This document shows, one piece after another, positions 4,295-4,494 of a stretch of DNA of 64,000 bases. How positions within the stretch are numbered: position 1 is the stretch's first letter; each line of letters starts with the position of its first letter. The notes below the pieces were generated by a model. It was not told the DNA's origin. It worked only from the letters and a program-made list of their open reading frames with translations, and ran no database searches. The stretch is from positions 55,490,001-55,554,000 of the forward strand of contig NC_043002.1 in the NCBI RefSeq assembly GCF_006345805.1, given 5' to 3'. Source of the stretch: Octopus sinensis (Eukaryota). Made by a program: the position numbers and the translations under genes.

Positions 4295-4494
4295 CTTATA
4301 TAGTGGTTTTAGCAGTGATAGATTTGGAAAATCCCATTCTATGTGATGGCCTTCACGACGCTGGAAGATATCATTTTCCTTTCCGTATTGTTTAGATTTA
4401 GTTTACGAAAATTGCTCGCTTTCATTTCTGGCGGAAGTTGAAGCTTGTACTAATATTTTACTTTCAGTGTGACAGAGATTTATGTTTACGGGAA
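4295..4494 (-). promoter_or_regulatory. Promoter of copy 1: TATA, kB, C/EBP-like, STAT-like
   Basis: On minus strand: TATATAAG 4302-4295, GGGATTTTCC 4335-4326, TTTCGTAA 4410-4403, TTCCCGTAA 4494-4486. TATA is ~100 nt upstream of the ATG. Confidence 0.65.

What the first reader, a model, noticed from the sequence alone, without database searches (positions are those of the whole stretch)
4295..4494. Inducible-cytokine promoter: kB site 23 nt upstream of TATA, plus STAT and C/EBP-like sites, conserved in all copies
Seen: GGGATTTTCC is intact in copies 1, 2, 3, 5 and 6 (one mismatch in copy 7), 23 nt before TATATAAG/TATAAAAG/TATATAAA. TTCCCGTAA or TTTCCGTAA lies ~160 nt further up. A TT(A/G)CGAAA site toggles only at the degenerate base. 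More TTCCCG(T/A)TAA motifs lie further upstream. Established: GGGATTTTCC is the kB element of the mammalian IL-6 promoter, TTCCCGTAA is the high-affinity m67-SIE STAT site, and NF-kB plus C/EBP drive IL-6. Inference: Rel/NF-kB induction with JAK-STAT positive feedback, which supports the cytokine call independently of the protein.
Basis: partly seen in the sequence, partly recalled or inferred. Interest (0 to 1): 0.8.

Follow-up and report, generated by a model that had tools for sequence, protein, structure and literature searches.

The report
Octopus cytokine-like gene promoter, kB site
This is the promoter of a tandemly duplicated octopus gene for a secreted protein predicted to fold like IL-6/G-CSF-type cytokines; its NF-kB-type site next to the TATA box is also present in the distantly related Argonauta, but the proposed STAT and C/EBP sites are not.

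Summary
The window is Octopus sinensis chromosome DNA (CM016864.1).

The argument "conserved in all copies" carries no weight. The copies are young duplicates, 85-96% identical over the whole 5 kb unit. Motif columns vary about as often as their neighbours (4/27 vs 58/279, p=0.62). A copy with a broken first exon still has perfect sites.

The informative comparison is Argonauta hians, where non-coding DNA no longer aligns with Octopus. There a consensus kB site (GGGGATTTCC) lies 24 nt before TATATAAA of the probable orthologue. It is the only consensus kB site in 22 kb. The spacer shares 3 of 23 bases with Octopus.

- **kB-TATA module:** supported. The site cannot tell Rel/NF-kB from NFAT-type factors.
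- **Weaker evidence:** both O. bimaculoides copies carry degraded kB sites.
- **STAT-like and C/EBP-like motifs:** absent from Argonauta. The first varies in its TTC half-site among copies; the second does not fit the C/EBP consensus. JAK-STAT feedback is unsupported.

The protein belongs to a cephalopod-only family with no Pfam match. Its AlphaFold model most resembles LIF, G-CSF, IL-11 and IL-6, with weak E-values. Transcription start and induction remain untested.

The parts
4295..4302 (-). TATA box TATATAAG of gene copy 1
   Evidence: It lies 111 nt upstream of the exon-1 ATG. Argonauta has TATATAAA at the equivalent place.
4326..4335 (-). kB / Rel-homology-domain site GGGATTTTCC, 23 nt upstream of the TATA box (copy 1)
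   Evidence: The Argonauta counterpart GGGGATTTCC lies 24 nt before its TATA and is the only consensus hit in 22 kb.
4183..4192 (-). Exon 1 coding part ATGAATAACT, followed by the splice donor GTAAGT
   Evidence: matches the MNNY... start of the O. sinensis protein models. Conserved as ATGAATCTAT|GTRAGTAT in Argonauta.
4403..4410 (+).
   Evidence: It does not fit TKNNGNAAK. In Argonauta it is interrupted: ATTTTCGATAGTAAAAC.
4486..4494 (-). TTCCCGTAA, an M67/SIE-like STAT motif at -159
   Evidence: It reads TTTCCGTAA in copies 3 and 6 and TTCTCGTAA in O. bimaculoides gene A. It is absent from Argonauta.
4506..4528 (-). Conserved block GATAAAAAT(A/T)G(T/A)TCATT..ATAA, containing a GATA core and a MEF2-like ATAAAAATAG
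   Evidence: It is the best local alignment between the Octopus and Argonauta promoters (score 34, null maximum 31). The 18-mer occurs only in family promoters, in gene orientation, in both genera.
4573..4582 (-). TTCCCGTTAA, the upstream STAT-like motif with 4-nt spacing
   Evidence: It is variable among copies (TTCCCGATAA, ATCCCGTTAA) and was not found in Argonauta.
5669..5678 (.). Distal palindromic kB consensus GGGATTTCCC at about -1340
   Evidence: Present in copies 1, 6, 8 and 9; one mismatch in copy 3; absent in copy 7 and in Argonauta.
25603..25643 (-). kB (25643..25634) plus TATATAAG (25610..25603) of copy 2, whose exon 1 has lost its splice donor
28185..28225 (+). kB plus TATAAAAG of copy 3
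48486..48526 (-). kB plus TATATAAG of copy 5
51702..51742 (+). kB plus TATATAAA of copy 6 (LOC118763924)
17272..17312 (+). GGGATTTTTC plus TATATAAG of copy 7; the gene body is missing because an assembly gap at 17316-17415 follows
987..2690 (-). Coding exons 2-4 of copy 1: exon 2 about 2531-2690, exon 3 1350-1484, exon 4 987-1217. No exon 5 was detected in the window.
   Evidence: tblastn with exons of the O. sinensis protein and the sequence reading.

Best explanation
Window 4295-4494 (minus strand) is the proximal promoter of one member of a head-to-head, tandemly duplicated gene cluster in Octopus sinensis.

The genes have 5 exons and encode about 230 aa. The products are secreted, cysteine-containing, all-helical proteins of a cephalopod-only family. 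Their predicted fold is that of long-chain class-I helical cytokines (LIF, G-CSF, IL-6 group).

The core of the promoter is a TATA box with a 10-bp Rel-homology-domain (kB) site 23-24 bp upstream. That puts the two centres about three helical turns apart.

Most likely mechanism: a Rel/NF-kB dimer, released by Toll/IKK-type signalling, binds this site and recruits the transcription machinery at the TATA box. This would make the gene stimulus-inducible.

Shown here: the promoter position relative to the coding exons, the motif content, the cross-genus retention of the kB-TATA pair, and the predicted fold.

Inferred: which factor binds, that the gene is inducible, and that it acts in immunity.

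The STAT-like and C/EBP-like motifs are most likely incidental, or at best Octopus-specific. A second conserved upstream block (GATAAAAATAG(T/A)TCATT, GATA/MEF2-like) is a better candidate for a co-operating element.
For: Identity of the locus and gene:
- The window matches O. sinensis CM016864.1, and the gene model matches LOC118763924/23.
- There are six gene copies plus promoter fragments.

kB-TATA module:
- kB lies 23 nt before TATA in five copies.
- Two Argonauta hians copies (L003, L008) have GGGGATTTCC 24 nt before TATATAAA and the same tiny first exon.
- The spacer shares 3 of 23 bases, by my count from the sequences.
- Apart from exons 3-5, the gene units do not align.
- In 232 kb of cephalopod DNA, with 4773 TATAWAW and 25 kB-consensus hits, the only kB-to-TATA pairs at 15-35 nt are these promoters.
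- My estimate: the background rate is roughly 4e-5 per position and strand. A same-orientation hit within +/-2 nt by chance is then about 2e-4.

Second conserved block.

Protein fold:
- AlphaFold models have pLDDT 75 and 82.8, pTM 0.72 and 0.77, with four long helices.
- In both Foldseek runs the top hits are almost all G-CSF, LIF, CLCF1, IL-11, IL-27p28, prolactin, GH, leptin, IL-6 and CNTF, with target-normalised TM up to 0.79.

Pathway present in the animal: O. vulgaris haemocytes express NF-kB pathway components and a STAT (PMC4199593).
Against: - There is no transcript, TSS, binding or induction data of any kind.
- Both O. bimaculoides promoters carry degraded sites: TGGATTTTCC (one G lost) and GGGATTTTTA. 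That genome shows no constraint beyond the roughly 80-85% background identity.
- The tree does not resolve Argonauta P0008 as the strict orthologue; it sits in a polytomy on the shortest branch.
- The two Argonauta copies are 96% identical, so they count as one observation.
- On the opposite strand the site equally fits an NFAT/NFAT5-type site (TGGAAANNYNY) in both genera.
- More distant paralogues (L004, L005, L006, L009) and the Sepia homologue (L010) have no kB site next to their annotated or inferred first coding exon; three of them (L005, L009, L010) have a TATA-like box there.
- Foldseek E-values are weak (0.06 or higher). There is no sequence-level link to any cytokine family.
Confidence: 0.6

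Rival explanations
1. The conserved site is used by a different Rel-homology-domain factor, NFAT or NFAT5 (TonEBP-like), rather than Rel/NF-kB. The gene would then respond to calcium/calcineurin or osmotic and other stress signals, or be tissue-specific, rather than to Toll/IKK immune signalling.
For: The opposite strand reads TTGGAAAATCCC in O. sinensis, TTGGAAAATCCA in O. bimaculoides gene A, and CTGGAAATCCCC / CCGGAAATCCCC in Argonauta. All keep the GGAAA core. All fit TGGAAANNYNY except the second Argonauta copy, whose leading T is a C. The pattern is my reading against a consensus recalled from memory. O. bimaculoides gene A loses a G of the GGG half-site but keeps GGAAA intact.
Against: The GGG(G) half-site is also retained between O. 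sinensis and Argonauta, as expected for a dimeric kB site. Both sequences fit the strict GGGRNWYYCC consensus. O. bimaculoides gene B keeps GGGA but loses GGAAA, so neither half is universally kept.
Confidence: 0.15
2. The motifs are incidental. The region is a TATA promoter, but the kB-like sequence has no regulatory role. Its presence in all window copies reflects recent duplication and gene conversion, and the Argonauta match is luck or a constraint unrelated to Rel factors.
For: Paralogue conservation equals the background. A copy with a broken exon 1 keeps perfect sites. Both O. bimaculoides copies have degraded sites. Only one independent deep comparison, Argonauta, is available.
Against: My estimate of the chance of a strict-consensus kB site in the same orientation within +/-2 nt of the same distance from TATA is about 2e-4, from the background rate. 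It is the only such site in 22 kb of L003. It sits in sequence that is otherwise unalignable.
Confidence: 0.2
3. One reading: NF-kB induction plus C/EBP co-operation plus JAK-STAT positive feedback through the TTCCCGTAA and TTCCCG(T/A)TAA sites.
For: TTCCCGTAA is an exact M67 STAT3 core and is present in 6 of 8 copies of the upstream region. O. bimaculoides gene A keeps the TTC...TAA half-sites as TTCTCGTAA. A STAT is expressed in octopus haemocytes. A helical-cytokine fold would fit signalling through JAK/STAT.
Against: No M67, SIE-like or GAS site lies in the proximal 500 nt of Argonauta copy L003, and the second copy L008 has only unrelated loose TTCNNN(G/T)AA matches at -285 to -478. No canonical TTCNNNGAA lies in the proximal 500 nt of any Octopus copy scanned. 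Copies 3 and 6, including the annotated intact gene LOC118763924, have TTTCCGTAA, which breaks the TTC half-site. TTRCGAAA fails the C/EBP consensus. Outside the duplicated promoters TTYCCGTAA has two further independent occurrences in the window, against about 1 expected.
Confidence: 0.08

Closest known systems
Mammalian IL-6 proximal promoter (kB site GGGATTTTCC(C) upstream of a TATA box, with NF-IL6/C-EBP and other sites)
   Same: The 10-mer is identical to the human IL-6 kB site (PMC10527052). Both are TATA-containing promoters of a gene for a secreted protein with a long-chain four-helix fold.
   Different: There is no sequence homology between the genes or the promoters. Argonauta uses GGGGATTTCC, so the identity to IL-6 is coincidental. 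No consensus C/EBP site is present. From memory, the IL-6 kB-to-TATA spacing is somewhat longer than the 23-24 nt seen here. Induction is untested.
Insect immune-gene promoters, with kB sites close to the TATA box plus nearby GATA (Serpent) sites, e.g. Cecropin and Diptericin
   Same: A kB-consensus site lies within about 35 bp of the TATA box. A conserved upstream block contains a WGATAA core. The genes form a tandemly expanded family.
   Different: The GATA-containing block is 190-315 bp away, not within about 50 bp. The product is cytokine-like rather than an antimicrobial peptide. The comparison rests on my recall of the Drosophila literature and was not tested here.
Drosophila Unpaired (Upd1-3) and vertebrate IL-6/G-CSF/LIF-type long-chain helical cytokines
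   Same: Both are secreted proteins of about 200 aa. The cephalopod protein has a predicted four-long-helix bundle, and its best structural neighbours are G-CSF, LIF, CLCF1, IL-11, IL-27p28 and IL-6.
   Different: There are no Pfam or PDB sequence matches. The family was found only in cephalopods. The receptor and signalling route are unknown. Upd was not compared directly.

Membership tests
kB (Rel/NF-kB) enhancer element | Match to the consensus GGGRNWYYCC | tested here: met
   GGGATTTTCC in five O. sinensis copies and GGGGATTTCC in two Argonauta copies. Not met in O. bimaculoides: TGGATTTTCC and GGGATTTTTA.
kB (Rel/NF-kB) enhancer element | Conservation across species beyond the neighbouring DNA | tested here: inconclusive
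   Met against Argonauta: same position and orientation, spacer 3/23 identical, promoter otherwise unalignable. Not met among the paralogues. Not met against O. bimaculoides. Only one deep lineage is available.
kB (Rel/NF-kB) enhancer element | Bound by a Rel-homology-domain protein and needed for stimulus-dependent transcription | not testable with these tools
   This needs EMSA, ChIP or reporter assays. The literature shows only that NF-kB pathway genes are expressed in octopus haemocytes (PMC4199593).
TATA-box core promoter | TATAWAAR about 25-35 nt upstream of a mapped TSS | tested here: inconclusive
   TATATAAG, TATAAAAG or TATATAAA lies 111 nt before the exon-1 ATG in Octopus and 80 nt before it in Argonauta. 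No TSS data are available.
STAT site (GAS / SIE) | Palindromic TTCNNNGAA, or the M67 variant TTCCCGTAA | tested here: inconclusive
   An exact M67 core is present in 6 of 8 copies, and TTTCCGTAA in 2. No canonical TTCNNNGAA lies in the proximal 500 nt.
STAT site (GAS / SIE) | Conservation in orthologous promoters | tested here: not met
   No GAS, SIE-like or M67 match lies in the proximal 500 nt of Argonauta copy L003. The second copy L008 has only unrelated loose matches at -285 to -478: TTCTATGAA, TTCTATTAA and TTCCTTTAA.
C/EBP site | Match to TKNNGNAAK or ATTGCGCAAT | tested here: not met
   TTACGAAAA / TTGCGAAAA fails at position 9, and the scan finds no hit at -75. The motif is interrupted by 4 nt in Argonauta.
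Long-chain class-I helical cytokines (IL-6/G-CSF/LIF group) | Four-helix bundle fold with long loops, in a secreted protein | tested here: met
   Two AlphaFold models (pLDDT 75 and 82.8) have long helices at about 32-59, 97-129, 153-176 and 201-229. Foldseek top hits are nearly all such cytokines: TMt 0.6-0.79, probability up to 1.0, but E of 0.06 or higher. The signal peptide was judged by eye only ([22 protein letters not shown]|AS).
Long-chain class-I helical cytokines (IL-6/G-CSF/LIF group) | Sequence or profile homology to a known cytokine family | tested here: not met
   No Pfam family was found at E up to 10 for the coding pieces. A family profile gave no PDB chain at E up to 10.
Long-chain class-I helical cytokines (IL-6/G-CSF/LIF group) | Signals through a class-I cytokine receptor and JAK/STAT | not tested
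   No receptor was sought. This needs binding and signalling assays.

The most novel reading that the evidence does not exclude
Cephalopods have an undescribed, lineage-specific family of IL-6/G-CSF-like helical cytokines. One octopod subfamily, tandemly amplified in Octopus, has been wired to Rel/NF-kB through a TATA-proximal kB site since before the Octopus-Argonauta split. That would be an NF-kB-to-helical-cytokine inflammatory axis outside vertebrates and insects, either ancient or convergent.
Probability: 0.3. Interest if true: 0.8.

Novelty: new member of a known kind. Interest (0 to 1): 0.6.

Why it matters
Class-I helical cytokines are well defined in vertebrates. To my knowledge, the only well-studied invertebrate examples are the Drosophila Unpaired proteins. 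Ligands for molluscan JAK/STAT signalling are essentially unknown.

A cephalopod-wide family of secreted proteins with a LIF/G-CSF/IL-6-like predicted fold would supply candidate ligands. One subfamily carries a kB site next to its TATA box that has been retained across octopod genera. That gives a directly testable regulatory hypothesis for cephalopod innate immunity, including the octopus-pathogen and squid-Vibrio systems.

I found no paper on these genes.

The methodological lesson is narrower. Motif 'conservation' among young tandem duplicates says nothing about function. Only the Argonauta comparison carried information.

Tried and rejected
- **Paralogue conservation as evidence of function.** Rejected. 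The whole unit is 85-96% identical, including 1.5 kb upstream. Motif columns vary no less than background. Copy 2, with a broken exon 1, keeps the sites.
- **Window-wide motif enrichment.** Rejected as a statistic, because the excess comes from duplicated copies of single ancestral sites.
- **Automatic multiple alignment of Octopus and Argonauta promoters.** MAFFT mis-registers the kB-TATA module, so I used anchored comparison, k-mer sharing and local alignment instead. Shared 7-mers exceed shuffles (33 vs 13.5), but only kB and TATA keep their positions.
- **Upstream region as a transposon carrying the kB site.** The 1.5 kb upstream segment does occur without the gene (copies 8 and 9, and copy 7). 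These belong to a mosaic of segmental duplications. Copies 8 and 9 lie in two 99.5% identical units that flank an assembly gap. No transposase or terminal repeats were found there. I did not pursue this further.
- **kB-TATA as a family-wide feature.** Rejected. Paralogues LOC115212847 (L005), LOC115213514 (L009), Argonauta P0009 and P0017 (L004, L006) and the Sepia pharaonis homologue (L010) lack it.
- **Sequence-based identification of the protein.** Pfam and a PDB profile search found nothing.
- **Rfam scan of the window.** Nothing found.
- **Literature searches.** Gene IDs and helical cytokines in cephalopods or invertebrates returned nothing relevant.
- **Look-up of a spliced O. bimaculoides protein.** The same protein was later returned by the representative search as P0010, and the look-up by that id was accepted.
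- **P0004.** It is not on record for a contig look-up.

Full report
**What is in the window.** The window is AT-rich (about 33% GC), microsatellite-laden eukaryotic DNA. A protein built from the exons next to the finding matches 'uncharacterized' proteins of Octopus vulgaris, O. sinensis, O. bimaculoides and Argonauta hians. The locus fetched for O. sinensis LOC118763924 (CM016864.1) matches the window at every position sampled, with a near-constant offset, so the window is O. sinensis chromosome DNA.

The gene has five coding exons. The first carries only ATGAATAACT before a GTAAGT donor. tblastn finds six gene copies:
- c1, minus strand, exons 987-2690;
- c2, minus, 22536-24429;
- c3, plus, 29865-31866;
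- c4, plus, 34299-36266;
- c5, minus, 45511-47646;
- c6, plus, 53350-55428.

They are arranged largely as head-to-head pairs inside a mosaic of segmental duplications.

**Checking the observation.**
- TATATAAG is at 4302..4295.
- GGGATTTTCC is at 4335..4326, exactly 23 nt upstream.
- TTACGAAA is at 4403-4410 (+).
- TTCCCGTAA is at 4494..4486, that is -159 from the kB site.
- TTCCCGTTAA is at 4582..4573.

The kB 10-mer is exact in c1, c2, c3, c5 and c6, always 23 nt before TATATAAG, TATAAAAG or TATATAAA. A sixth promoter fragment (c7, 17272+) reads GGGATTTTTC and runs into an assembly gap. c4 has lost exon 1 and its promoter. Two more copies of the upstream 1.5 kb (57627.., 60748..) lose homology in the middle of the kB site. 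They lie in two 99.5% identical units that flank an N gap.

**Why conservation among the copies is not evidence.** The entire duplicated unit is 85-96% identical between copies. That includes 1.5 kb upstream and much of the introns. The proximal promoter (91-96%) does not stand out.

In the 8-copy promoter alignment, 4 of 27 upstream motif columns vary, against 58 of 279 other columns (Fisher p=0.62). Including kB and TATA in the five full copies gives 6/45 vs 84/430 (p=0.42).

Copy 2 reads ATGAATAACTAAGTATG. Its exon-1 splice donor is gone and an in-frame TAA follows, so it is probably dead. It still has perfect kB and TATA boxes. The window-wide 'enrichment' of each motif is the same ancestral site counted many times.

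**The informative comparisons.**

*O. bimaculoides.* This species is too close to be informative. Its gene A promoter is 85% identical over 520 bp, and motifs fare no better than background:
- kB is TGGATTTTCC in gene A, with one G of the GGG run lost (L007).
- kB is GGGATTTTTA in gene B, a degenerate-looking gene (L002).
- The STAT-like site is TTCTCGTAA in gene A.
- TTACGAAA is kept in gene A and reads TTACAAAA in gene B.

*Argonauta hians.* This species is far enough away that non-coding DNA is saturated. Against the O. sinensis gene unit, only exons 3-5 align collinearly. Its probable orthologue is P0008. That protein sits on the shortest branch to the Octopus clade in an unresolved polytomy and shares the ATGAATnnnT|GTRAGTAT first exon.

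The Argonauta gene has GGGGATTTCC 24 nt before TATATAAA. That is the only GGGRNWYYCC match on either strand of the 22 kb locus. A 96% identical second copy (L008) has the same arrangement. The spacer between kB and TATA shares only 3 of 23 bases with Octopus, by my count.

The only kB-to-TATA pairs at 15-35 nt are these family promoters. From that background (about 4e-5 per position and strand), I estimate a same-orientation consensus site within +/-2 nt of the Octopus spacing at roughly 2e-4 by chance.

This is a genuine, though single, phylogenetic footprint for the kB-TATA module.

**What is not conserved.** Argonauta copy L003 has no TTCCCGTAA, no TTCNNNTAA and no canonical TTCNNNGAA in its proximal 500 nt. 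The second copy L008 has only loose TTCNNN(G/T)AA matches at -285 to -478. No canonical TTCNNNGAA occurs in the proximal 500 nt of any Octopus copy scanned.

In c3 and c6, the latter being the annotated intact gene, the STAT-like site reads TTTCCGTAA, which alters the TTC half-site. TTRCGAAA does not fit the C/EBP consensus TKNNGNAAK. It is split by four bases in Argonauta.

Octopus and Argonauta promoters share more 7-mers than shuffles do (33 vs 13.5 +/- 4.5), but only kB and TATA keep their positions.

**A second candidate element.** One further element emerged without being looked for. The best local alignment between the two promoters is GATAAAAATAG(T/A)TCATT(C/A)ATAA (score 34, null maximum 31). 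This 18-mer occurs only in family promoters, in gene orientation, in both genera. It lies at -192 in Octopus and at -314 or -231 in the two Argonauta copies. It contains a GATA core and a 9/10 match to the MEF2 consensus as I recall it.

**The gene product.** The family has no Pfam match and no sequence-level match to any PDB chain. A profile search of 1.8 billion representatives finds 22 proteins. The full-length matches to named proteins are all cephalopod: Octopus species, Argonauta and Sepia pharaonis. Others come from unnamed Logan and ENA contigs. A few weak partial hits fall in long gastropod and bivalve proteins.

AlphaFold2 models of the 230-aa O. sinensis protein gave these scores:
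- 5-sequence alignment: pLDDT 75, pTM 0.72.
- 16-sequence alignment: pLDDT 82.8, pTM 0.77, with all five models above 80.

Both show an N-terminal hydrophobic leader and four long helices. In both Foldseek searches of the PDB, the top 40 or so hits are almost exclusively long-chain class-I helical cytokines and hormones. They include G-CSF, LIF, CLCF1, IL-11, IL-27p28, IL-12p35, prolactin, GH, leptin, IL-6 and CNTF. Target-normalised TM-scores reach 0.79 and probabilities 1.0, but E-values are only 0.06-1.

So the 'cytokine call' is supported at the level of predicted fold. It is not supported at the level of homology or function.

**Mechanism.** The best-supported reading has three parts:
- The core promoter is a TATA box.
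- A Rel-homology-domain dimer site is centred about 32-33 bp upstream, roughly three helical turns away.
- A GATA/MEF2-like block lies further upstream.

By analogy with kB-dependent genes, I infer that Rel/NF-kB binds the site after Toll/IKK-type signalling and drives inducible expression. NF-kB pathway components and a STAT are expressed in octopus haemocytes (PMC4199593).

The site cannot distinguish Rel/NF-kB from NFAT/NFAT5. The opposite strand reads TGGAAA(A)TCCC in O. sinensis and in Argonauta L003, and the GGAAA core is kept in all four intact-looking promoters. The degraded sites in O. bimaculoides are a real caveat.

More distant paralogues and the cuttlefish homologue have no kB site upstream of their first coding exon, and some have a TATA-like box there. 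The wiring is therefore specific to this octopod subfamily.

**Comparison with what is known.** GGGATTTTCC(C) is the human IL-6 kB site (PMC10527052). TTCCCGTAA is the M67 STAT3 core (PMC6135694). However, exact identity to the IL-6 site has no evolutionary meaning, because Argonauta uses another consensus-fitting sequence.

The element is best filed as a new instance of a known kind: a TATA-proximal kB promoter. It sits in front of an undescribed, cytokine-like cephalopod gene family. I found no publication on these genes.

**Verdict.**
- Observation: confirmed.
- Interpretation: partly supported. The promoter and kB calls hold. The STAT, C/EBP and feedback calls do not. The 'conserved in all copies' argument is invalid.

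Nothing about transcription start, factor binding or induction could be tested here.

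Noticed in passing
window 4506-4528 (-) and equivalents (17082+, 25834-, 27993+, 48718-, 51510+, 57825-, 60946-); L003 9573; L008 7336: An 18-22 nt block, GATAAAAATAG(T/A)TCATT(C/A)ATAA, is shared by Octopus and Argonauta promoters of this gene. It contains a GATA core and a MEF2-like ATAAAAATAG, and it is a better candidate co-regulatory element than the STAT or C/EBP motifs.
   Followed up: partly
window 25497-25513 (-), copy 2 exon 1: Copy 2 reads ATGAATAACTAAGTATG. 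The GT of the exon-1 splice donor is missing and an in-frame TAA follows, so this copy is probably a pseudogene. It nevertheless has intact kB and TATA boxes.
   Followed up: yes
window 5669-5678, 50366-50375, 59012-59021, 62133-62142: A perfectly palindromic kB consensus, GGGATTTCCC, lies about 1.34 kb upstream of the TATA box in copies 1, 6, 8 and 9. Copy 3 has one mismatch (GGGATTTCGC), and the site is absent from copy 7 and from Argonauta.
   Followed up: partly
window 56882-59905 and 60006-63029, with N gap 59906-60005: Two 3 kb units, 99.5% identical, flank an assembly gap. Each carries the 1.5 kb upstream region of the gene family, but homology breaks inside the kB site (57627, 60748). 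This may be a very recent tandem duplication or an assembly artefact.
   Followed up: partly
window 34155-36266 (copy 4) and 17272-17415 (copy 7): Copy 4 has exons 2-5 but no exon 1 or promoter; unrelated repeated DNA abuts at 34155. Copy 7 is a promoter with no gene body, and an N gap at 17316-17415 follows its TATA box.
   Followed up: partly
window 21275-22159 (-): A 294-aa ORF looks like a Tc1/mariner-type transposase, judged by eye from motifs such as WSDESK-like and DNAPCH-like stretches. It lies between gene copies and was not searched against any library.
   Followed up: no
window-wide; proteins P0005, P0008, P0011, P0021 and others: The encoded proteins form a cephalopod-wide family (Octopus, Argonauta, Sepia) with no Pfam domain. 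Six cysteines are conserved: four invariant and one near-invariant in the 16-sequence alignment, and all six invariant in the 5-sequence one. The predicted four-helix bundle most resembles LIF, G-CSF and IL-6-type cytokines.
   Followed up: partly
L001 (window 41845-64000 and beyond), opposite strand: The O. sinensis annotation lists a 274-aa gene on the opposite strand whose range covers the whole 23.6 kb locus. At least part of the cluster may therefore sit inside an intron of a larger gene.
   Followed up: no
L003 9600-9740 vs L008 7360-7420: Between the conserved block and the kB site, Argonauta carries a tandem array of a unit of about 28 nt (…TCTATCTATCACCCTCTCACTGATGTC…). Its copy number differs between the two Argonauta gene copies, which changes the block-to-kB distance from 314 to 231 nt.
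   Followed up: no
L010 5964-6117 (Sepia pharaonis): The cuttlefish homologue encodes the signal peptide and first helix in a single first coding exon, with no 10-nt mini-exon. It has TATATAATC upstream and no kB site. The deposited protein model (P0021) appears truncated at its 5' end.
   Followed up: partly
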